A DNA stretch of 64,000 nucleotides. Source: Anolis carolinensis (lineage: Eukaryota). The DNA is taken from the NCBI RefSeq assembly GCF_035594765.1, contig NC_085843.1:212699971-212763970 (forward strand). Direction: 5' to 3'. The notes under the pieces are model-generated. The model did not search any database. It was not told the origin of the DNA and worked only from the letters and a program-made list of their open reading frames with translations. Positions 1-60,641 of this stretch are shown here, one piece after another. The position numbers were made by a program, and so were the translations under genes. Within the stretch, counting starts at the first letter, position 1; each line of letters opens with the position of its first letter.

Positions 1-1851
1 GACAACTCATGCATCCTCTATCACATAGGGGCATCAGGGGCCCTGTCCCTTCTGTAATTAGATTGGGGAAAGTGTAGCAAGGCACATCGCTGCATTGCCG
101 TTTTCCCCCACCAAATGGGGGGAAAGGCCAAAAATGTAGGTAGCTCCATCGGAACTATTCAAAAGACGCATCGCTCACAATGGTTGGCGAGGAAGCTCCT
201 TGCAATGCTTCCTTGCCACTACAGCTATCAATGGGGTGGGGTCACAGCCTGTGTCATGTGATGAGGTTCATCGGGATCTGTCCCTGAAGAGGAGGCCTAG
301 TGCGGTAAGGGGCCAAAAACCTCTCGTGTTATGAGGCGGGTCAGCTCCCTACAAGTGCATTGCTATCATACAACCCATTGTAGGAGTAAAATGAAATATG
401 TTATTCCTATCGTGGAAAACCATAATTGGCAGATGAGTTGATGCTGGCCCCAGGGACTCTGAGCTATGCAATCCCCCCTGGCCTCCAGTGGCAGTGCAAG
501 ATCTAGGCATCTTTTTGAATTGTGCATGTGCCCCCTCCCAGATCTGGGAACAAAGAGTTTCCAGTTCCTCCAACATATTCAGTTTTTAAATATTGTACAT
601 TCTTTTAATGTCATGTTATTGATCAAAAATTGTACAAGATGTGTAGACATGGAGCACATCTGTTTATATAGAGCAGGTTAAAATGCTAAACATAAATAAA
701 AAAATAAAAATAATATTTGAAGCCAGCAAAACTTTATCTTACCTATTTTTCTGATGGGACTAGCCACATTACTTATGTCAAAAGTATATGAGTGTATAGG
801 TTTATGATATTTTTAGCTTAATCATATACAATTCTAAAATGTAGGTGTTCTATTGCCTCAATTATTACTTAAGGTGATAAAACAGAAAGTAAGTTCTCCC
901 TGAGAGTTAAACAGCCTACTACAGAAAGAGAAGATAGTGATCAAGTTAACATTGACCTAAGATGAAGTTTCCACTAGGCATCATCTGTCAACTGGCAACA
1001 CCACTGTCTTTGAGGACTTACTCTTCATCCATCTATTTGCATCCATGACCATTTTTGAAGTGACATTAGAACAGCCTAGAGGCTCTTCGTCTGAGTAACT
1101 GCCAAGGACTACTAAAGCTGGGTGTCACATACAACAGAAGTGATAAGCCAAGATAAGATAATGAACTGTGACAACTACTGTCAGCAGTTGTACAATAAGC
1201 AGCCATCAAGTATTATACCTGAGGGTTCATGAGAACTGAGTTGGAAAATAAACGGCTACCTTCATTCTCATATGTCATAACATGAAGATACAGAAAAATA
1301 TGCAGCAAGCCTCCTAGTCTTCTGTATTAAATATGTGATAACACTATGATCCACTGTAGTCAACAATATCCAGAGAAATAAGGTACAGTCTCCTGATGTG
1401 AATGAGATTACAGCAAGGTAAGTGGTAATTGAGCAACTAAACTAAGTTGCTAGATTCAGGTGTCTTCTAAATAACTAGGGTTGTATCACGGTTTCTAATG
1501 TGCTAAAGCTTAATACTGAAAAATAGCACTTAGTTTTACAGAAAAATATTTTTGTATCGAATGAGAAGGATCCACAAGTGGATCTACTGAAATTATGGGG
1601 AAAAATTGCTCTCCCATCATTGAAATTATGAGACAACACAACAGTGTGGGTTAACTATGAGCAACTTTTATTATATGTTACCAAGGCAGGGAGCGCGTTT
1701 CCACTGTTCCCGCCCACAATAAGTCCTGGCTGGGACTATTTTTTCTTTACCTTCACTGAAGGGGAGCAAAGCGCTTCCGCACCCTCATGCTGAGGGTGGG
1801 AAAAGAATTAGTTCAGTGAATTGCCTATAAGAAGGATTAAATCAGAATACA

Positions 1852-2380
1852 GTGTATTTACTCAAATGTAATGCTCACAATTTTTGGTTAAATTATCTTT
1901 CTAAACTTAGGGTTTGCGTTAGATATGTGTCATTCAGTAATCTTAGTGCTGAGCCAAAGCCAAAGGGGAAGCTGCTTCAGGAGCTGCACATGGAGCTCCT
2001 ATTTGAGGGGCGTCATCTCTCAGTTCATTGAGATTTGTAGTTTGGGTTGGGATGCATCAACATTCTTTGACAGAGAAAGATCAAGGCCTTGTCAAACTAC
2101 CACCCCCAAGATTCCATTATATTGAATCAAGGCAGTTAAAGGGCAGTCATTCCACAGCAGAGAGAGATCCCAAAAGTTTTATTTTCCATTGCTGGAAGCT
2201 TTGGTGCTCTAACACTTTTGTTTTTAGAGAAGAAATTCTCAGCAGGCAGGAACAACAAATGCTGGTGCGTAATACATTCGCCAGCAAATCCTTTTTTTTT
2301 TTTTTTTTTTTTTTGCTTCAGGCTTTTGGAAACTGAGGTGTTCATTAGACTTGGTGGCACATTAGACTCAAGTAAATGTA
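1852..2380. mobile_element. Longer member of the same Tc1/mariner MITE family as 63455-63623
   Basis: Ends gtatttactcaaatgtaatgctcac and cattagactcaagtaaatgta. Confidence 0.7.
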
Positions 2381-2667
2381 TTTTATTTAGTTCTTTCTTT
2401 TGGCATACATTTTTACTATTCAAATGTTCCTTCCACCCTGGCAGCTGTTCCTTTAAGTCTCCATGCTACCTACACATATTTCTCTCCCATTGGAATAGTG
2501 GCTCTTAATTTGTTTCAGTGATTCTAAGCAATACTTTCCTCCTTTTAAAAAGTCACATCCACATATTGCAGCTCAAAGGATGTGCAAAGTGTGCCCCATA
2601 GATTGAACGTAGCCACTGGTGCTTACTTTTATTCCTCTGACTCCCCATCCTCCAACACCCCCCCTTC

Positions 2668-2714
<47 letters not shown>
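2668..2714. repeat. (CTAT)n tetranucleotide microsatellite
   Basis: About 11 perfect units visible. Confidence 0.95.
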
Positions 2715-2715
<1 letters not shown>

Positions 2716-4065
2716 AATTGTATGCTTTTGGACAATGCTTTTGGACAATGTTATGCAGAACCCCAACACATGAAAGCATACATAAATCTCCCCATCCTGA
2801 CAAGCATCCCATAATCTTGCAGTGGTCCAATCGTTTCTTTTTCATCTGCAACCACTCTCAAAATAGCTTAGTTATCTTCCTATCTCCATTTTGAGAGTGG
2901 ATGCAGAGTGATTGGGGCATGGCATTGTGTGTATATAATTCACAGGTCCGGAATTGCCCAGACCTGTCCTAAATTATGTACCTTCAAGAAGGCATTATAG
3001 ATCTGACAGGTGACTATCTTATCTATGATAGTAAGTTGAAGAATGGGGAAACCATATTAAAGCCTGCAATGTAATGAGATAATACATCTAACATGTCAAT
3101 TGCACAATTCTTTCCTTGAAAGTGATTATGTGGATATACGGTGGTGATGTCTGCCTTTTTTCTCTCTTTCCCTCTCCCCAACCCATGTATATATTTTGCT
3201 TTGTATTATTTTCATTAACTGATTTTTATTTTGAGAGAGGAAAGGAGATTGTGGCCACCTTCAGCTGCAAGATAATTTTTCTCATTTGTACCTCCAGGTG
3301 AATTAGAGGCATGAAAATATATTTTCTGATCTTGCCTGGAAGTGGGTTACATGGAGGTATATCCATCACATACAAGAAAGAACCAGATATTTCTATGTGA
3401 TAAGAATATAAGATGAATTATCTTCTCAGATACATGTTGACAGTTCCTATGAGAGACATCAAGATGAAAAGCAGTTCAAGCCATGATAAACCATAGAGAT
3501 ATGCAAAATGGACTTGTCAGATAGGTGGGGAAGAGGAGAAAGTTGGGAAGATGTTGAATTGTACAGGTTCAATCACTTCATAATCTGTGAAATGTATGCA
3601 TGATACTTCACAGTTGTTAACTGTGTTGAATTTATTTGGGCCATGGAAAACAAATGCATATAAAATGGAAGTAGCAAATATCCTTGTACTCAGTGTGTTA
3701 AACGGGATTCTCTTTGAAAATCAATATGCATTTTATTTTAACAGGCCTCTGTGATTAAACAGGCTCTAAAAACAATGTTGAATGTATCTTAATTGCTTCT
3801 TTAAGTGCACGTCAAGGTTTGTTCCTTGCTCAGCACTGGAGATATTGAACTATTATGTCAGGGAAGTAAATGATTCATGAAAAACAATCAGATACTTCTT
3901 ACAATGGAAAGCTACTTTAATTTTACTCTGGAAGAATGGAATTAATATAAAATTATTCCACATTTGCATCTAAAGCCATCTAAGCTGGGATGCAAAAGGC
4001 AAATTCTGCTTATTATTCACTAAAAGGAAAGACTGGGGACCAATTTTCACAGTAACAAAAGCAAC

Positions 4066-4340
4066 TTTTTTATCGTGTCAGAAGAGACTTGAGAACATAC
4101 TGCAATTCGCTTCTGGTGTGAGAGAATTGGCCGTCTACAGTGATGATGTCTAGGGGATGCCCGGATGTGTTACCATCCTGCTGGGAGACTTTTCTCATGT
4201 CCCTGCAAGCTAGAACTGACAGATGGGAACTCATCCCGTCTCACAAATTCGAACTGGCAACCTTCAGGTTAGCAATCTAACCTTCAGATCAGCAGTCCAG
4301 CCAGCACAAGGGTTTAACCCATTGCGCCACCATGACTCCT
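4066..4340 (-). mobile_element. tRNA-derived SINE (Anolis SINE2-like)
   Basis: Reverse complement of the same family as 18898-19171 (ttctggtgtgagagaattggccgtct..., gggtttaacccattgcgccacc). Confidence 0.85.
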
Positions 4341-4789
4341 CCAAAAACACCTGACATGAGCCAAGTCCATTTGTACATAAATGAGGAAAAGACAATAAGC
4401 ACAATTACTTCTTTATTTCCAAGCAATTTCTCACCCTACAATGACGACTGTATACTTGGAAACTATGTTTCCCTCTCCCCACTGTCTGACAAGCAAGCTA
4501 GTTAAAATATACACATACCCCTACATCTTCCAGAGTACCTTTTGATAATGAAGCATTCAATTCCGTTTTGACTCCAAGCTTAAGTACTATGGGACTTCCA
4601 GCGATCATGGATTGTCATGCCCCATATTATTAAATGGTGATGACATGAACAGAGAAGCGGTGAGTTAATAGTATAGAGTATGATTCATATTACCACGAGA
4701 TTATCCACGTTTTTTCATATCCATGGTGGATTCCAGAATTGAATACCATGGACCAACTATATGCCCATTCATTACCTACTTAATGATTG

Positions 4790-5835
4790 TTAAATGGTTT
4801 CTGACATGGCAAACTTACCATCATACCCAGACACGACAGAAGTACTGATGGTCAGTTGTAGGGCTGAACAGGGTATTGGGCTGCAACCAGTGCTGGTTGG
4901 GTCCCCCCCTCCCGAAGGAGTAGGTTCACAGTTTGGGGGTCCTCCTGGACTCAATGCTGACCTTGGCAGTGGCCGGGACAACCTTTGCACAGTTAAAGGT
5001 TGTGCGCCCATAGCTCACAAAGCCCAATCTGGCTATGGTAGTATATGTTTTAGTCACATCCAGACTAGACTACTATAACACACTCTATGTGGGGTTGCTC
5101 CAGAAAAGGGTTTGAAAACCAACTGATGCAAAGTTCAACAGCTAGCCTGCTCATGGGAGTAGGATATAGAAAAAGAACTACCCTGCTTCTGAAGCAGCTT
5201 CACTGGCTTCCAGTTTGTTTCTGGGTGCAATTCAAGGTGCTGGCTTTAGCCTATAAAGCCCTAAATGGTTCAGGCCCAGCCTACTTGAGGGACAGGATCT
5301 CTTCCTATCAGTCTGCACGAGCCCTGAGATCATCAGGAGAGGCCCTTCTCTCGGTCACCACCGTCATGAGTACGGTTGGTAGGAATGAGAGAGAGTGCCT
5401 CTTTGGTGGTAGCTCCATCATTTTGGAACTCCCTCCCCAAAGAGGTGCATTTGGCCTCCTCATTACTGGCCTTCCGCTCCCAGGTTAAAACCTTTCTATG
5501 GAAGCAGGCCTTTCCCGACAACCCTTAACAAGCAGGCTATTTTGGTCTGGCAAGGCTCACGCAGCCAAAGATTTGGAGCTTCGAAATTTTGAGTACAATG
5601 TTTTAAGGATAACCTTAGTGGTCTGAGGCCCAGGGATTTTTAATTATAATGATAAATGGTGTTATTTATTACGCTTATTTTATATCATTTATGTAATGTG
5701 TTTATGTAATGTGTTGGTTTATTGTTTATTTGTTTGGGTTGGGAGGATGATGATGTGCTTTTGTATTATGAAATTTCTGTTTAACCATTTGTTCGCCGCT
5801 TTGAGTCCCACTCGTGGAAGAAAAGTGGGATGATG

Positions 5836-6911: not shown

Positions 6912-9673
6912 TTATTTAGCAGGCTGATTAGCCAAGTGTTTTGATGTTCGCATAAGATGTGTTGTTGTGACTCCTAATGTTTTGGTTCATGGTTATTATG
7001 ATTTAGAGACAAATAAGAAGACTGGATTAATTCTAACAATTGCTCATGATACACGCTGTGCCTCATTATTTCTTTGAGCTCCCATCTATATCCTTATCCA
7101 TCTGGTAGCTTGCTTTATTATGGAAACTTTTCGAGCTGGGTAATCTTTTTCATGTTTTTAGCAAGCTCCCTTGTACTGAGTCAGACCAAAAATTGCACTT
7201 GTTCCATAGTCTCTATGCTGACACCTCTCTACATCTTTCTACTGAGGCAATCCTACTTCATAATCTCTCTTTATATAAATGTAATGTGCTGTTTTACTAT
7301 GGAGTAAACTCAGGGCCGGCCGGAGATATTTTTAAATGTTAAGCGGGGGGCTAAAAAGCGCCCCCGCCACCGGCCCCGCCTCCCACGCCCTGGCCCCGCC
7401 TCCCACGCTGTGTGGGAGGCGGGGCCAGGGCGAATAGTGCGGGGGGCGGGGCCAGAGTTGGCCCCGCCCCCCGTGCCCTGGCCGCGACCAGGAAGTAAGG
7501 CCCGAATGGCCTAGCTGTGCTGTGCGCATGCGCACAGCACAGCTAGGCCATTTTGCCCTTAGTCAACAAACTAAGGGCAAAAATGGCCTATCTGGCAGTG
7601 CGCATGCGCACAGCCAGATAAGCCATTTTTGCCCTTAGTTTGTTGACTAAGGGCAAAATGGCCTAGCTGTGCTGTGCGCACGCGCACAGCACTGCTAGGG
7701 CATTCGGGCCTTACTTCCTGGTCGCGGCCGGCGATCGCCCGGGCGATCGCCGGCCGCGACCAGGAAGTAAGGCCCGAATGGGCTATCTGCGCTGTGCGCA
7801 CGGGCACAGCGCAGATAGCCCATTCGGGCCTTACTTCCTGGTCGCGGCCGCCGGCCGCCCGGGCGATCGGCGGCCGCGACCAGGAAGTAAGGCCATTTTG
7901 CCCTTAGTAACAAACCAAGGGCAAAAATGGCTTATCTGGCTGTGCGCATGCGCACAGCCAGATAAGCCATTTTTGCCCTTAGTTTGTTACTAAGGGCAAA
8001 ATGGCCTAGGTGTGCTGTGCGCACGCGCACAGCACAGCTAGGCCATTCGGGCCTTACTTCCTGGTCGCGGCCGGCGATCGCCCGGGCGATCGCCGGCCGC
8101 GACCAGGAAGTAAGGCCCGAATGGGCTATCTGCGCTGTGCACACGGGCACAGCGCAGATAGCCCATTCGGGCCTTACTTCCTGGTCGCGGCCGCCGGCCG
8201 CCCGGGCGATCGGCGGCCGTGACCAGGAAGTAAGGCCATTTTGCCCTTAGTAACAAACTAAGGGCAAAAATGGCTTATCTGGCTGTGCGCATTTATTTAG
8301 CAGGCTGATTAGCCAAGTGTTTTGATGTTCGCATAAGATGTGTTGTTGTGACTCCTAATGTTTTGGTTCATGGTTATTATGATTTAGAGACAAATAAGAA
8401 GACTGGATTAATTCTAACAATTGCTCATGATACACGCTGTGCCTCATTATTTCTTTGAGCTCCCATCTATATCCTTATCCATCTGATAGCTTGCTTTATT
8501 ATGGAAACTTTTCGAGCTGGGTAATCTTTTTCATGTTTTTAGCAAGCTCCCTTGTACTGAGTCAGACCAAAAATTGCACTTGTTCCATAGTCTCTATGCT
8601 GACACCTCTCTACATCTTTCTACTGAGGCAATCCTACTTCATAATCTCTCTTTATATAAATGTAATGTGCTGTTTTACTATGGAGTAAACTCAGGGCCGG
8701 CCGGAGATATTTTTAAATGTTAAGCGGGGGGCTAAAAAGCGCCCCCGCCACCGGCCCCGCCTCCCACGCCCTGGCCCCGCCTCCCACGCTGTGTGGGAGG
8801 CGGGGCCAGGGCGAATAGTGCGGGGGGCGGGGCCAGAGTTGGCCCCGCCCCCCGTGCCCTGGCCGCGACCAGGAAGTAAGGCCCGAATGGCCTAGCTGTG
8901 CTGTGCGCATGCGCACAGCACAGCTAGGCCATTTTGCCCTTAGTCAACAAACTAAGGGCAAAAATGGCCTATCTGGCAGTGCGCATGCGCACAGCCAGAT
9001 AAGCCATTTTTGCCCTTAGTTTGTTGACTAAGGGCAAAATGGCCTAGCTGTGCTGTGCGCACGCGCACAGCACTGCTAGGGCATTCGGGCCTTACTTCCT
9101 GGTCGCGGCCGGCGATCGCCCGGGCGATCGCCGGCCGCGACCAGGAAGTAAGGCCCGAATGGGCTATCTGCGCTGTGCGCACGGGCACAGCGCAGATAGC
9201 CCATTCGGGCCTTACTTCCTGGTCGCGGCCGCCGGCCGCCCGGGCGATCGGCGGCCGCGACCAGGAAGTAAGGCCATTTTGCCCTTAGTAACAAACCAAG
9301 GGCAAAAATGGCTTATCTGGCTGTGCGCATGCGCACAGCCAGATAAGCCATTTTTGCCCTTAGTTTGTTACTAAGGGCAAAATGGCCTAGGTGTGCTGTG
9401 CGCACGCGCACAGCACAGCTAGGCCATTCGGGCCTTACTTCCTGGTCGCGGCCGGCGATCGCCCGGGCGATCGCCGGCCGCGACCAGGAAGTAAGGCCCG
9501 AATGGGCTATCTGCGCTGTGCACACGGGCACAGCGCAGATAGCCCATTCGGGCCTTACTTCCTGGTCGCGGCCGCCGGCCGCCCGGGCGATCGGCGGCCG
9601 TGACCAGGAAGTAAGGCCATTTTGCCCTTAGTAACAAACTAAGGGCAAAAATGGCTTATCTGGCTGTGCGCAT
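6912..9673 (+). repeat. 1381-bp direct tandem duplication (6912-8292 / 8293-9673)
   Basis: All ORF-track entries repeat with a 1381-bp offset. One difference noticed: G7105 versus A8486. Confidence 0.95.
7311..8292. mobile_element. Truncated duplicate of the left part of the palindromic hAT element
   Basis: Same left terminus preceded by AGTAAACT (7303-7310). By eye it matches 8692-9673 and ends abruptly at 8292. Confidence 0.85.
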
Positions 9674-10350
9674 GCGCACAGCCAGATAAGCCATTTTTGC
9701 CCTTAGTTTGTTACTAAGGGCAAAATGGCCTAGGTGTGCTGTGCGCACGCGCACAGCACAGCTAGGCCATTCGGGCCTTACTTCCTGGTCGCGGCCGGCG
9801 ATCGCCCGGGCGATCGGCGGCCGCGACCAGGAAGTAAGGCCATTTTGCCCTTAGTAACAGGATTCTTAGTTTGTTGACTTAGTTTGTTGACTAAGGGCAA
9901 AATGGCCTAGGTGTGCTGTGCGCACGGGCACAGCGCAGATAGCCCATTCGGGCCTTACTTCCTGGTCGCGGCCGGCGATCGCCCGGGCGATCGCCGGCCG
10001 CGACCAGGAAGTAAGGCCCGAATGGCCTAGCTGTGCTGTGCGCGTGCGCACAGCACACCTAGGCCATTTTGCCCTTAGTCAACAAACTAAGGGCAAAAAT
10101 GGCTTATCTGGCTGTGCGCATGCGCACAGCACAGATAGGCCATTTTTGCCCTTAGTTTGTTACTAAGGGCAAAATGGCCTAGGTGCTTGTCGCGGTTTGG
10201 CGTGGGCGCGGGGATTGAAGCCCCGCGGGCCCGCGCCAACACCGGAGGCGTCGGTGGCGCTACGGGGCGCTGTCGACGCCTCGACAGCGCCCCTAGCAGC
10301 CAGCGCCCGAGGCGGCCGCGTCAGCGGCCGCCTAGTAACAACCGGCCCTG
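8692..10350. mobile_element. Complete non-autonomous hAT-type DNA transposon (about 1.66 kb) filled with nested palindromes
   Basis: Termini CAGGGCCGG (8692) and CCGGCCCTG (ending 10350). Perfect 8-bp TSD AGTAAACT at 8684-8691 and 10351-10358. Subterminal GC-rich hairpins, no transposase ORF. Confidence 0.85.
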
Positions 10351-10644
10351 AGTAAACTGCAAAACCACTGAACCAAATCACATCCAATTTGGCTACAAAA
10401 GACATAGTCATCCAATCTATGTCTTTCAAACAAAAAACCTAGAAAAATAAAGCCCAAATTAGAGGACACGAAAGAGCCATTTTCCCCCTTTAGAAACAGC
10501 TCAGAACGGTAGGCCCCGGTCCCTCTAGGACCCGTCCATTTCGTATCCTAGGGCACAGGGCAGAGTGCACTTAGGCATCATCCACACTGCCTATAAAATA
10601 CAGATTATCGGATTTGAACTGGATTATTTGGCAGTGTAGACTCA

Positions 10645-60085: not shown

Positions 60086-60641
60086 CAGAGCTTTCCAAAA
60101 TGTGTGTTGGTACACACTAGTGTGTCACCTGTGGTCCCTAGGTGTGTCATGTGAAAATGCTTTCCCACCCCCCTAAAGACTGGTGCTGTTCAAGTGCAGG
60201 TACTGTTATAACTTTTATAATTTGCACAATTTGTTGATTGAGTTGCAGTAATTGCTACTAAAATGGTTAAGTTTCTAACTAAGAAAAGAAAGTTCATTGA
60301 CAATGATGTTTGTGATGAACTACATTGAGAGGCTATAGAGAAAACTACATAAGAATCAACTGTAGCACATAGGTGTAAAGGGAAAAAATCCAAACTTTNN
60401 NNNNNNNNNNNNNNNNNNNNNNNNNNNNNNNNNNNNNNNNNNNNNNNNNNNNNNNNNNNNNNNNNNNNNNNNNNNNNNNNNNNNNNNNNNNNNNNNNNNN
60501 NNNNNNNNNNNNNNNNNNNNNNNNNNNNNNNCTTATAAAGGGTTCATTTCACTAGTTTACCAGTAAAACTGAATTAGCATATCGTGAAAGGATGCATGCC
60601 TAAAAAGCATGCCACCAACATTAAAAGTTTGGAAAACTCTT
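60086..60641. mobile_element. hAT-like element spanning the assembly gap
   Basis: Ends CAGAGCTTTCCAAAAT and AGTTTGGAAAACTCT. Confidence 0.5.
60399..60531. other. Assembly gap (133 N)
   Basis: Run of N. Confidence 1.

What the first reader, a model, noticed from the sequence alone, without database searches (positions are those of the whole stretch)
8692..10350. hAT-type transposon built as a palindrome of palindromes
Seen: between 9-bp TIRs and a perfect 8-bp TSD, nearly every base belongs to a self-complementary module. Modules include an 80-bp perfect palindrome centred on CCC|GGG (cattcgggccttacttcctggtcgcggccggcgatcgccc plus its reverse complement), 40-50-bp palindromes centred on GCGCA|TGCGC, and a gccattttgcccttagt-loop-actaagggcaaaaatggc hairpin. 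These nest into larger ones: a perfect 118-bp palindrome (9614-9731), a 250-bp imperfect one (8861-9110, equal to 7480-7729) and a 214-bp imperfect one (9878-10091). There is also a 343-bp periodicity. Both subterminal regions are hairpin series, such as ggggcgctgtcga-cgcc-tcgacagcgcccc and aggcggccgc-gtca-gcggccgcct. Established: short TIRs with an 8-bp TSD define hAT, and long perfect palindromes are normally unstable. Inference: the interior grew by repeated fold-back template switching, so array length and module order may differ between copies. I do not know whether this family is already catalogued.
Basis: partly seen in the sequence, partly recalled or inferred. Interest (0 to 1): 0.85.

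Follow-up and report, generated by a model that had tools for sequence, protein, structure and literature searches.

The report
Palindrome-packed non-autonomous hAT-like transposon
A 1.66-kb non-coding, cut-and-paste (hAT-like) transposon from a very abundant, young family in a vertebrate genome carries a CpG-rich interior built almost wholly of hairpin-forming palindromes; the structure is real and unusual, but the kind of element is known.

Summary
Window 8692-10350 is a 1659-bp insertion with perfect 9-bp inverted ends (CAGGGCCGG) and a perfect 8-bp target duplication (AGTAAACT). Contigs from two public runs join the flanks with exactly element plus one duplication removed. The ends belong to a very high-copy, young family. 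About 88% of its bases pair in a single-strand fold, and the 118-bp and 80-82-bp perfect palindromes are as described.

The interior has three palindromic module types in a 343-bp unit. That unit is repeated directly about 2.7 times (96.5-99.1% identity), followed by a truly inverted tail. Much of the "palindrome of palindromes" therefore follows from tandem repeats of self-complementary modules. Orientation markers still show at least two real inverted duplications.

hAT-type is the best classification, but no transposase partner could be sought. The closest published relatives are the orphan Anolis families hAT-N6/N7/N8_AC.

The element sits in a 1381-bp near-perfect tandem duplication whose junction lies at the apex of the 118-bp palindrome. 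Whether that is real or an assembly artefact is unresolved. Other first readers noted this stretch (s1-517360, s1-517403) and similar elements elsewhere (s1-528333, s1-517374).

Verdict: new member of a known kind, moderate interest.

The parts
8684..8691 (.). left copy of the 8-bp target-site duplication AGTAAACT
   Evidence: The joint 8685->10353 skips 1667 = 1659 + 8 bases.
8692..8700 (+). left terminal inverted repeat CAGGGCCGG
   Evidence: Beyond 9 bp the two ends are not mirror images.
8692..8860 (+). left subterminal region (GC 73%). It has GC-box-like repeats and two long hairpins: 8767-8813 (arm 21) and 8821-8854 (arm 15).
   Evidence: It has the highest summed contig depth of the element (about 1e5-1e6 against about 44 for the single X1 contig on the flank).
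8861..10182 (.). interior array of palindromic modules: X (80-bp palindrome centred CCC|GGG), Y (about 40 bp, centred GCGCA|TGCGC or variants) and Z (41-bp hairpin in mirror forms F and R)
   Evidence: Module map, 91% of bases paired, CpG o/e 0.94.
8929..9841 (+). about 2.7 direct tandem copies of the 343-bp higher-order unit [F-Y2-R-Y-Xx-Y3-Xx']
   Evidence: repeat 1 vs repeat 2 is 96.5% identical, repeat 2 vs repeat 3 is 99.1%.
9614..9731 (.). perfect spacerless 118-bp palindrome (F-Y2-R). Its centre, 9672|9673, corresponds to the junction of the 1381-bp duplication.
8861..9110 (.). 250-bp imperfect palindrome (5 mismatched pairs)
9855..9892 (.). rearrangement junction between the direct array and the inverted tail. 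A Z hairpin is cut in its loop, followed by 5 filler bases and a 13-bp unit repeated 2.2 times.
   Evidence: TRF row 9865-9892
9878..10182 (-). inverted tail. 9929-10060 is a perfect reverse complement of 9389-9520. It includes the 214-bp imperfect palindrome 9878-10091.
   Evidence: inverted 100% against best direct 91%; I1, I2, I12.
10183..10350 (+). right subterminal region (GC 75%, CpG o/e 1.14) with hairpins at 10264-10293 and 10310-10333
10342..10350 (-). right terminal inverted repeat (CCGGCCCTG on the + strand)
10351..10358 (.). right copy of the target-site duplication AGTAAACT
6912..8292 (+). first copy of the 1381-bp tandem duplication: 399 bp of left flank (including the left TSD) plus the first 982 bp of the element (7311-8292). 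It ends at the position matching the apex of the 118-bp palindrome.
   Evidence: one mismatch, 7105 G vs 8486 A; runs X1 and X2 read only G at 8486.

Best explanation
This is one copy of a young, very abundant, non-autonomous cut-and-paste DNA transposon, most likely of the hAT superfamily. It inserted into another repeat and created the 8-bp duplication AGTAAACT.

It has no coding capacity. It must be moved in trans by a transposase that recognises the 9-bp ends and the two different GC-rich subterminal regions of about 170 bp (inferred).

Its 1.3-kb interior is cargo built from three self-complementary modules:
- X: an 80-bp palindrome carrying CAGGAAGT.
- Y: a palindrome of about 40 bp centred on GCGCATGCGC or variants.
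- Z: a 41-bp hairpin with GCCATTTT arms.

The array grew in two ways.
- Inverted duplication around palindrome centres. This is shown by the mirrored F/R forms of Z inside the perfect 118-bp palindrome, and by a perfect 132-bp inverted copy in the tail.
- More recently, ordinary direct tandem duplication of a 343-bp unit, as shown by 96.5-99.1% identity between successive units.

Because every module is its own reverse complement, most of the longer 'nested' inverted matches follow automatically from module order.

Breakpoints of later rearrangements sit at hairpin tips: the tail junction in a Z loop, and the 1381-bp duplication junction at the apex of the 118-bp palindrome. This suggests that extruded hairpins are cut or stall replication and are repaired with little or no homology (inferred).

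The high CpG content (o/e 0.94 against 0.24 in the surrounding DNA) is most simply explained by youth.
For: Ends and insertion:
- TIR and TSD are read directly. The 15-nt left end occurs only at 8692 and in the duplicated copy at 7311.
- Contigs in runs X15 and X6 join 8685 to 10353, skipping 1667 = 1659 + 8 bases. That is a precise empty site, allelic or in a paralogous copy of the host repeat.

Abundance and age:
- 734-5794 contigs per run match the laid stretch 8100-10600 at >=95%, in four runs from four studies.
- About 39-43% of those contigs are >=99% identical.
- Summed depth at the termini is 1e5-1e6, against about 44 (X1) and about 8 (X2) for the low-depth contigs on the flank.

No coding capacity:
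- No ORF of >=110 aa overlaps the element.
- No Rfam family reaches its threshold.

Structure:
- Palindrome statistics.
- Module order.
- Direct 343-bp repeats.
- Perfect inverted copy 9389-9520 / 9929-10060, with best direct match 91%.
- Filler and slippage at 9855-9892.
- Duplication junction at the palindrome apex.
- CpG figures.

Literature:
- hAT is defined by 8-bp TSDs and short TIRs (PMC3942097).
- The orphan Anolis families hAT-N6/N7/N8_AC have the TIR CAGAGSCGGYCC, which matches 10 of the first 12 bases here. Their TSD pattern NNTNNANN fits AGTAAACT (PMC3014272).
Against: - No transposase partner was seen or could be searched for, so superfamily assignment rests on one TSD and a 9-bp TIR.
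- The single TSD fits neither the Ac (nTnnnnAn) nor the Buster (nnnTAnnn) target consensus. Those two consensus patterns are from my own knowledge of Arensburger et al. 2011.
- The empty-site contigs have only 27 nt on their shorter side, and the flank is itself repetitive. They may come from paralogues rather than from an allele.
- No second full copy could be retrieved, so differing TSDs at other copies are not shown.
- Long-range module order rests on this assembly alone. Short-read contigs of about 60 nt confirm the pieces but not their order.
- Only 2 of 9 substitutions between 343-bp repeats 1 and 2 are CpG transitions. That is not the excess expected of heavily methylated DNA, so youth may not be the whole explanation for the CpG content.
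Confidence: 0.8

Rival explanations
1. Mobile CpG island. The palindromic modules are kept because they are binding sites for housekeeping-promoter factors: NRF1 at GCGCATGCGC, ETS/GABPA at CAGGAAGT, YY1 at GCCATTTT, SP/KLF at the GC boxes of the left end. Binding would hold the element unmethylated and open. That could favour its own mobilisation and seed promoter-like islands across the genome. This adds to the transposon reading rather than replacing it.
For: - Each module type carries one such motif: GCGCATGCGC x5 (GCGCAYGCGC at 9 sites), CMGGAAGT x13, AANATGGC x18, GGGAGGCGGGGC x3. The first and last have no matches in the other 56.9 kb; CMGGAAGT has 3 and AANATGGC has 5.
- GC 62% and CpG o/e 0.94 over 1.66 kb meet CpG-island criteria, in a genome with o/e 0.24.
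- There is no excess of CpG transitions among internal-repeat differences.
- Precedent: a DNA-transposon wave spread YY1 motifs of the form GCCATTTTG in Poecilia picta (PMC10760456).
Against: - Motif identities are consensus matches recalled from knowledge, not tested binding.
- Counts are inflated by repetition. There are only three or four independent modules.
- No match to the stricter YY1 form AANATGGCG.
- High CpG is expected of any young GC-rich insertion.
- No methylation, accessibility or RNA data could be examined.
Confidence: 0.2
2. The ends belong to a different 8-bp-TSD superfamily (P-like, Merlin, Zisupton or similar), or to an as yet undescribed group, rather than hAT.
For: - Only a 9-bp TIR and one TSD support hAT.
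- The TSD fits neither the Ac nor the Buster target consensus.
- The similar Anolis families are 'orphans' with no known autonomous partner.
Against: - The ends start CAGGG, which fits the hAT terminal pattern YARNG (own knowledge).
- The TIR is short, as in hAT.
- The nearest published TIRs are classified as hAT.
- P-like and Merlin ends start differently (own knowledge).
Confidence: 0.08
3. The interior array is captured host DNA, for example a bidirectional CpG-island promoter or a local satellite. It would have been picked up by a short MITE with these ends (Pack-type capture) and then amplified, rather than built up inside the element.
For: - Termini are about 5-100 times deeper than interior modules in the contig depth tables. 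Most family members therefore seem to lack this array or carry less of it.
- The array begins and ends in partial modules: a partial x at 8861 and a partial Y at about 10174-10182.
- Other notes on this genome report Pack-type hAT elements (unverified).
Against: - No source locus is known.
- The modules occur nowhere else in the 64-kb window.
- Interior pieces are themselves at high depth (1e3-1e5) and so travel with the family.
Confidence: 0.2
4. Part of what is seen is an assembly artefact. The 1381-bp tandem duplication, and possibly the module count, would come from mis-joined haplotypes or from reads broken at the palindrome, not from the organism's DNA.
For: - The two copies differ at one base only.
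- Runs X1 and X2 read only G at 8486, where the second copy has A.
- In X1 the contig entering 8293 comes from 25 bases that do not match 8268-8292. Its depth (43.7) is about equal to that of the palindrome-centre bin (39.4), as expected for a single copy.
- No listed contig bridges 8292|8293.
Against: - There is no gap (N run) near the junction. The only N run is at 60399-60531.
- All 30 depth bins of the stretch are covered by contigs >=95% identical in X1 and X2, and 27 of 30 in X15 and X6, so the modules themselves are real.
- A break at a palindrome apex with 1 bp of microhomology is also what a biological hairpin break or a replication template switch would give.
- Most contigs were not listed, so the absence of a bridging contig proves little.
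Confidence: 0.5

Closest known systems
Orphan non-autonomous hAT families hAT-N6_AC, hAT-N7_AC and hAT-N8_AC of Anolis carolinensis (Novick et al. 2010, PMC3014272)
   Same: - The terminal repeat CAGAGSCGGYCC matches 10 of the first 12 bases here (CAGGGCCGGCCG).
- 8-bp TSD with the pattern NNTNNANN, which AGTAAACT fits.
- Hundreds to over a thousand copies, very low divergence, and no known autonomous partner.
   Different: - Those families are 288-810 bp, and no palindromic array is described for them.
- Two of the 12 terminal bases differ.
- I could not compare internal sequence, and the species of this window is not known to me. Context suggests a squamate.
Foldback-type transposons with repeat-built arms, such as Drosophila FB and Tetris (PMC4079207, listed; not read here)
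   Same: - The element is dominated by inverted and tandem sub-repeats.
- It is able to snap back into long hairpins.
- Its internal repeats can expand.
   Different: - Here the true TIR is only 9 bp and the two subterminal regions are unrelated.
- The TSD is 8 bp.
- The palindromes are internal cargo, not the arms of the element.
Transposons whose internal tandem repeats expand towards satellite DNA (general phenomenon, own knowledge)
   Same: A 343-bp higher-order unit is amplified in tandem inside a mobile element.
   Different: The units are themselves made of perfect palindromes, and no free-standing array was seen.
Transcription-factor-motif-bearing transposon waves, such as the YY1-motif DNA transposon on the Poecilia picta X chromosome (PMC10760456)
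   Same: A non-autonomous DNA transposon carries GCCATTTTG-type YY1-like motifs in many recent copies.
   Different: There is no evidence here of binding, methylation difference or chromosomal bias. Several motif types are combined in palindromic form.
Fragile long palindromes, such as human PATRRs and yeast hairpin-capped breaks (own knowledge)
   Same: Rearrangement junctions lie at the exact centre of a perfect 118-bp palindrome and in a hairpin loop.
   Different: These palindromes are GC-rich rather than AT-rich and are shorter. One of the two junctions may be an assembly artefact.

Membership tests
hAT superfamily (non-autonomous member) | 8-bp target-site duplication | tested here: met
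   AGTAAACT lies on both sides. The empty-site joint skips exactly 1659 + 8 bases. Definition from PMC3942097.
hAT superfamily (non-autonomous member) | short terminal inverted repeats (about 10-25 bp) beginning YARNG | tested here: met
   Perfect 9-bp TIR CAGGGCCGG. It is one base shorter than the range quoted in PMC3942097. The YARNG pattern is from own knowledge.
hAT superfamily (non-autonomous member) | mobilised by a transposase with BED finger, DDE/RNase-H-like core and hATC dimerisation domain | not testable with these tools
   The element has no ORF of >=110 aa. No hAT transposase turned up in the window: of the five ORFs scanned against Pfam, two are reverse-transcriptase fragments and three have no family. 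No eukaryote genome collection is available.
hAT superfamily (non-autonomous member) | many copies, each with a different TSD | tested here: inconclusive
   Termini are at very high depth in four independent runs, but no other full copy with its flanks could be read.
hAT superfamily (non-autonomous member) | family-specific target consensus (Ac nTnnnnAn, Buster nnnTAnnn) | tested here: inconclusive
   The one TSD fits neither. It fits the NNTNNANN pattern of Anolis hAT-N7/N8. One site cannot define a consensus.
MITE (miniature inverted-repeat element) | small size (roughly under 800 bp), non-coding, high copy number, with TIR and TSD | tested here: not met
   This copy is 1659 bp. The other criteria are met. 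Depth and joints suggest that shorter forms exist.
Foldback (FB-type) transposon | long terminal inverted repeats built of tandem sub-repeats that reach the element ends | tested here: not met
   The ends mirror each other for 9 bp only. The subterminal regions show just a weak, gapped 31-column local similarity at unequal distances from the two ends.
CpG island (sequence criteria only) | length >=200-500 bp, GC >=50-55%, CpG observed/expected >=0.6-0.65 | tested here: met
   1659 bp, GC 62.3%, o/e 0.94. Whether it is unmethylated or promoter-like is not testable here.
Rfam microRNA precursor families | score at or above the family's gathering threshold | tested here: not met
   The best hits (MIR838 65 bits against 190, mir-2545 64 against 94) are all below threshold. 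They are generic matches of perfect hairpins.

The most novel reading that the evidence does not exclude
Thousands of copies of this family act as mobile, self-protecting CpG islands. Palindromic NRF1, ETS, YY1 and SP/KLF sites would keep them unmethylated and open, so the family scatters promoter- or insulator-like islands and hairpin-prone fragile sites through a squamate-like genome. The same palindromes would drive rearrangements that break at hairpin tips, as with the 1381-bp duplication here.
Probability: 0.15. Interest if true: 0.75.

Novelty: new member of a known kind. Interest (0 to 1): 0.4.

Why it matters
- If the family is as abundant as the contig depths suggest, it may make up a sizeable share of the sequence-defined "CpG islands" and of the long perfect palindromes in this genome. 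That affects promoter prediction, methylation analysis and assembly quality.
- Two breakpoints at hairpin tips within 3.5 kb make the family a natural test bed for palindrome-induced breakage in a vertebrate germline.
- The combination of housekeeping-promoter motifs in one mobile element gives a directly testable hypothesis about how a DNA transposon might avoid silencing.
- None of this changes the classification. It is a non-autonomous hAT-like element with amplified cargo.

Tried and rejected
- Other copies outside the window. Two exact-match scans of metagenome contigs, one with an X-module 24-mer and one with the 22-nt left end, found nothing. The scan's own index found no look-alike by sequence.
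- Other copies inside the window. The TIR and a degenerate TIR pattern occur only at 8692 and in the duplicated 7311. The X-module core occurs only within 7486-10018. No other kilobase of the window has raised palindrome density.
- Structured RNA. Rfam gave only sub-threshold miRNA-like hairpin hits, so this was rejected as an RNA gene family.
- Literature. The string CAGGGCCGGCC occurs only in unrelated papers. Searches for NRF1/YY1/CpG-island DNA transposons and for palindrome-apex duplications found no description of such a family.
- Longer TIRs. Local alignment of the two subterminal regions gave only a weak GC-rich match.
- Motif enrichment against shuffles is not independent evidence, because the modules are repeats of one another.
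- Settling the 1381-bp duplication from public runs. Only Logan contigs were laid; the two raw-read runs listed were of other organisms. The result leans towards absence in other individuals but is not decisive.
Full report
**What is there**

The window looks like a CpG-depleted vertebrate genome: GC 39%, CpG o/e 0.24 outside the element, and LINE reverse-transcriptase ORFs. Titles of other notes on the same genome (Penelope, SPIN hAT, SCAN genes, a 12.5-kb hAT) point to a squamate-like animal. I did not verify that.

At 8692-10350 lies a 1659-bp GC-rich block (62% GC). It starts with CAGGGCCGG and ends with the reverse complement. AGTAAACT directly precedes it (8684-8691) and directly follows it (10351-10358).

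**Is it an insertion?**

I laid Logan contigs of four public runs of the same organism, from four studies, on 8100-10600.
- Runs X15 and X6 each hold a contig that joins 8685 to 10353. It skips 1667 bases, exactly the element plus one copy of the 8-bp duplication.
- Related joints and loose ends at 8690 show paralogous copies of the flanking repeat running straight through the site.
- The flank is itself repetitive and these contigs are short (27 nt on the shorter side). I cannot say whether the empty site is an allele or a paralogue.

**Abundance and age**

- Between 734 and 5794 contigs per run match the stretch at >=95%, and about 39-43% of them at >=99%.
- Summed depth at the termini is 1e5-1e6. 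The low-depth contigs on the flank read about 44 (X1) and about 8 (X2).
- Interior bins are 5 to 100 times lower than the termini.

The depth sums are rough, but they indicate thousands of terminus-bearing copies. Many are nearly identical to this one, and most carry less of this array or none.

**The palindromes**

- Perfect hairpins (arm >=9, loop <=6) cover 62% of the element, against 0.07% in shuffles and 3% window-wide.
- The single-strand DNA fold pairs 88% of all bases.
- One 343-nt unit folds at -211 kcal/mol, z = -32.7.
- 9614-9731 is a perfect 118-bp palindrome. Perfect 80-82-bp palindromes lie at 9082-9161, 9424-9505 and 9944-10025.
- 8861-9110 (250 bp) has 5 mismatched pairs and 9878-10091 (214 bp) has 4.

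**Anatomy**

The interior (8861-10182) parses into three self-complementary modules.
- X: 80 bp, centred CCC|GGG.
- Y: about 40 bp, centred GCGCA|TGCGC or variants.
- Z: a 41-bp hairpin.

Z is slightly asymmetric (four T against five A in its arms, and a directional loop). It therefore exists in two mirror forms, F and R. These alternate strictly along the array.

The higher-order unit [F-Y2-R-Y-Xx-Y3-Xx'] is 343 bp. It is repeated directly about 2.7 times across 8929-9841. Repeats 1 and 2 are 96.5% identical, and repeats 2 and 3 are 99.1% identical.

**How much of the nesting is trivial?**

A tandem array of modules that each equal their own reverse complement must show many long inverted matches. 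Most of the 95 inverted pairs are of that kind.

Two features are not trivial.
- The 118-bp palindrome contains F on one side and its exact mirror R on the other. It is therefore a true inverted duplication about the central GCGCATGCGC.
- The tail of the array is truly inverted. 9929-10060 is a perfect reverse complement of 9389-9520, while its best direct match elsewhere is only 91%. In addition, the Y variant centred GCGCACGCGC in the three direct units appears as GCGCGTGCGC in the tail.

The direct array and the inverted tail meet at 9855-9892. There a Z hairpin is cut in its loop, followed by 5 filler bases and a 13-bp unit repeated 2.2 times. That is the signature of a low-homology repair or template-switch junction at a hairpin tip.

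6912-8292 and 8293-9673 are a 1381-bp tandem duplication with one mismatch (7105 G, 8486 A). Each unit holds 399 bp of left flank plus the first 982 bp of the element. The junction 8292|8293 corresponds, to the base and with 1 bp of microhomology, to the centre of the perfect 118-bp palindrome (9672|9673).

Evidence from the public runs:
- X1 and X2 read only G at 8486.
- The X1 contig enters 8293 from 25 bases that do not match the element.
- In X1 the flank depth (43.7) is about equal to the depth of the palindrome-centre bin (39.4).

These points lean towards a single copy in other individuals. The duplication is therefore either private to the assembled animal or an assembly artefact, such as two haplotypes joined at a read break. 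I put this at about even odds. There is no N gap nearby.

**Classification**

An 8-bp TSD with short TIRs defines hAT (PMC3942097). The CAGGG start fits the hAT terminal pattern (own knowledge).

The closest published ends I found are those of the orphan Anolis carolinensis families hAT-N6/N7/N8_AC (PMC3014272).
- Their TIR is CAGAGSCGGYCC, which matches 10 of the first 12 bases here.
- Their TSD pattern NNTNNANN fits AGTAAACT.
- They have hundreds to over a thousand copies at 0.3-1.7% divergence from consensus.
- They have no known autonomous partner.

The transposase criterion could not be tested. The element has no ORF, the window holds no hAT transposase, and no eukaryote genome collection is available. 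It is too long to be called a MITE. It fails the foldback-element criterion, because its ends mirror each other for only 9 bp.

**Composition and motifs**

CpG o/e is 0.94 over the element against 0.24 around it. Each module type carries a motif that I recognise as a housekeeping-promoter site:
- GCGCATGCGC (NRF1), 5 perfect sites.
- CAGGAAGT-type ETS sites, 13.
- AANATGGC (YY1 core), 18, but no match to the stricter AANATGGCG.
- GC boxes in the left end.

It has a precedent in a YY1-motif DNA-transposon wave in Poecilia picta (PMC10760456). The counts are not independent, since the modules are repeats of one another. Binding was not tested, and youth alone explains the CpG content. I keep this as the novel reading at about 15-20%.

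**What led nowhere**

- Metagenome scans for other copies.
- Rfam, which gave only sub-threshold generic hairpin hits.
- Text searches for the terminal string and for comparable elements.
- The scan's own index searched by sequence.

**Verdict**

It is a real, young, high-copy, non-autonomous hAT-like transposon whose cargo is an amplified array of perfect palindromes, with rearrangement junctions at hairpin tips.

The kind of element is known. A family this abundant is probably already in repeat libraries, which I could not check. I rate it a new member of a known kind, with interest 0.4.

Noticed in passing
window 6912-9673: A 1381-bp tandem duplication (6912-8292 = 8293-9673) with a single mismatch (7105 G / 8486 A). 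Its junction lies at the exact apex of the perfect 118-bp palindrome. Public runs X1 and X2 show only G at 8486. It is either a real private rearrangement or an assembly artefact.
   Followed up: partly
window 9855-9892: Internal rearrangement junction. A Z hairpin is broken in its loop, followed by 5 filler bases (GGATT) and a 13-bp unit (CTTAGTTTGTTGA) repeated 2.2 times. It joins the direct array to an inverted tail, and is a second breakpoint at a hairpin tip.
   Followed up: partly
window 8604-8691 and 10351-10451: The transposon sits inside another high-copy repeat (summed contig depth 2e3-3e5). Paralogues read ...GAGTAAAC then AACAAAACCACTGAACC straight through the site, without the insertion.
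   Followed up: partly
window 8557-8603: Run X1 has no contig >=95% identical here. Its 624-nt contig leaves the assembly at 8556, while X2 covers the region. This may be a structural or sequence polymorphism in the left flank.
   Followed up: no
window 25829-27820 (+) and 18512-18916 (+): A 663-aa open frame with a reverse-transcriptase domain (RVT_1, E = 6.5e-37) lies in a GC-rich 25-28 kb block, which is probably a fairly intact LINE. A second reverse-transcriptase fragment lies at about 18.5 kb.
   Followed up: partly
window 60399-60531: The only run of N in the window (133 bases). It is an assembly gap or masked stretch and was left untouched.
   Followed up: no
window 8905, 9057, 9400, 9743, 10040: The Y-module centres differ by single CpG-type transitions: GCGCATGCGC, GCGCACGCGC and GCGCGTGCGC. 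The perfect NRF1-like palindrome and its variants are therefore one deamination step apart. The variant's strand also serves as an orientation marker.
   Followed up: partly
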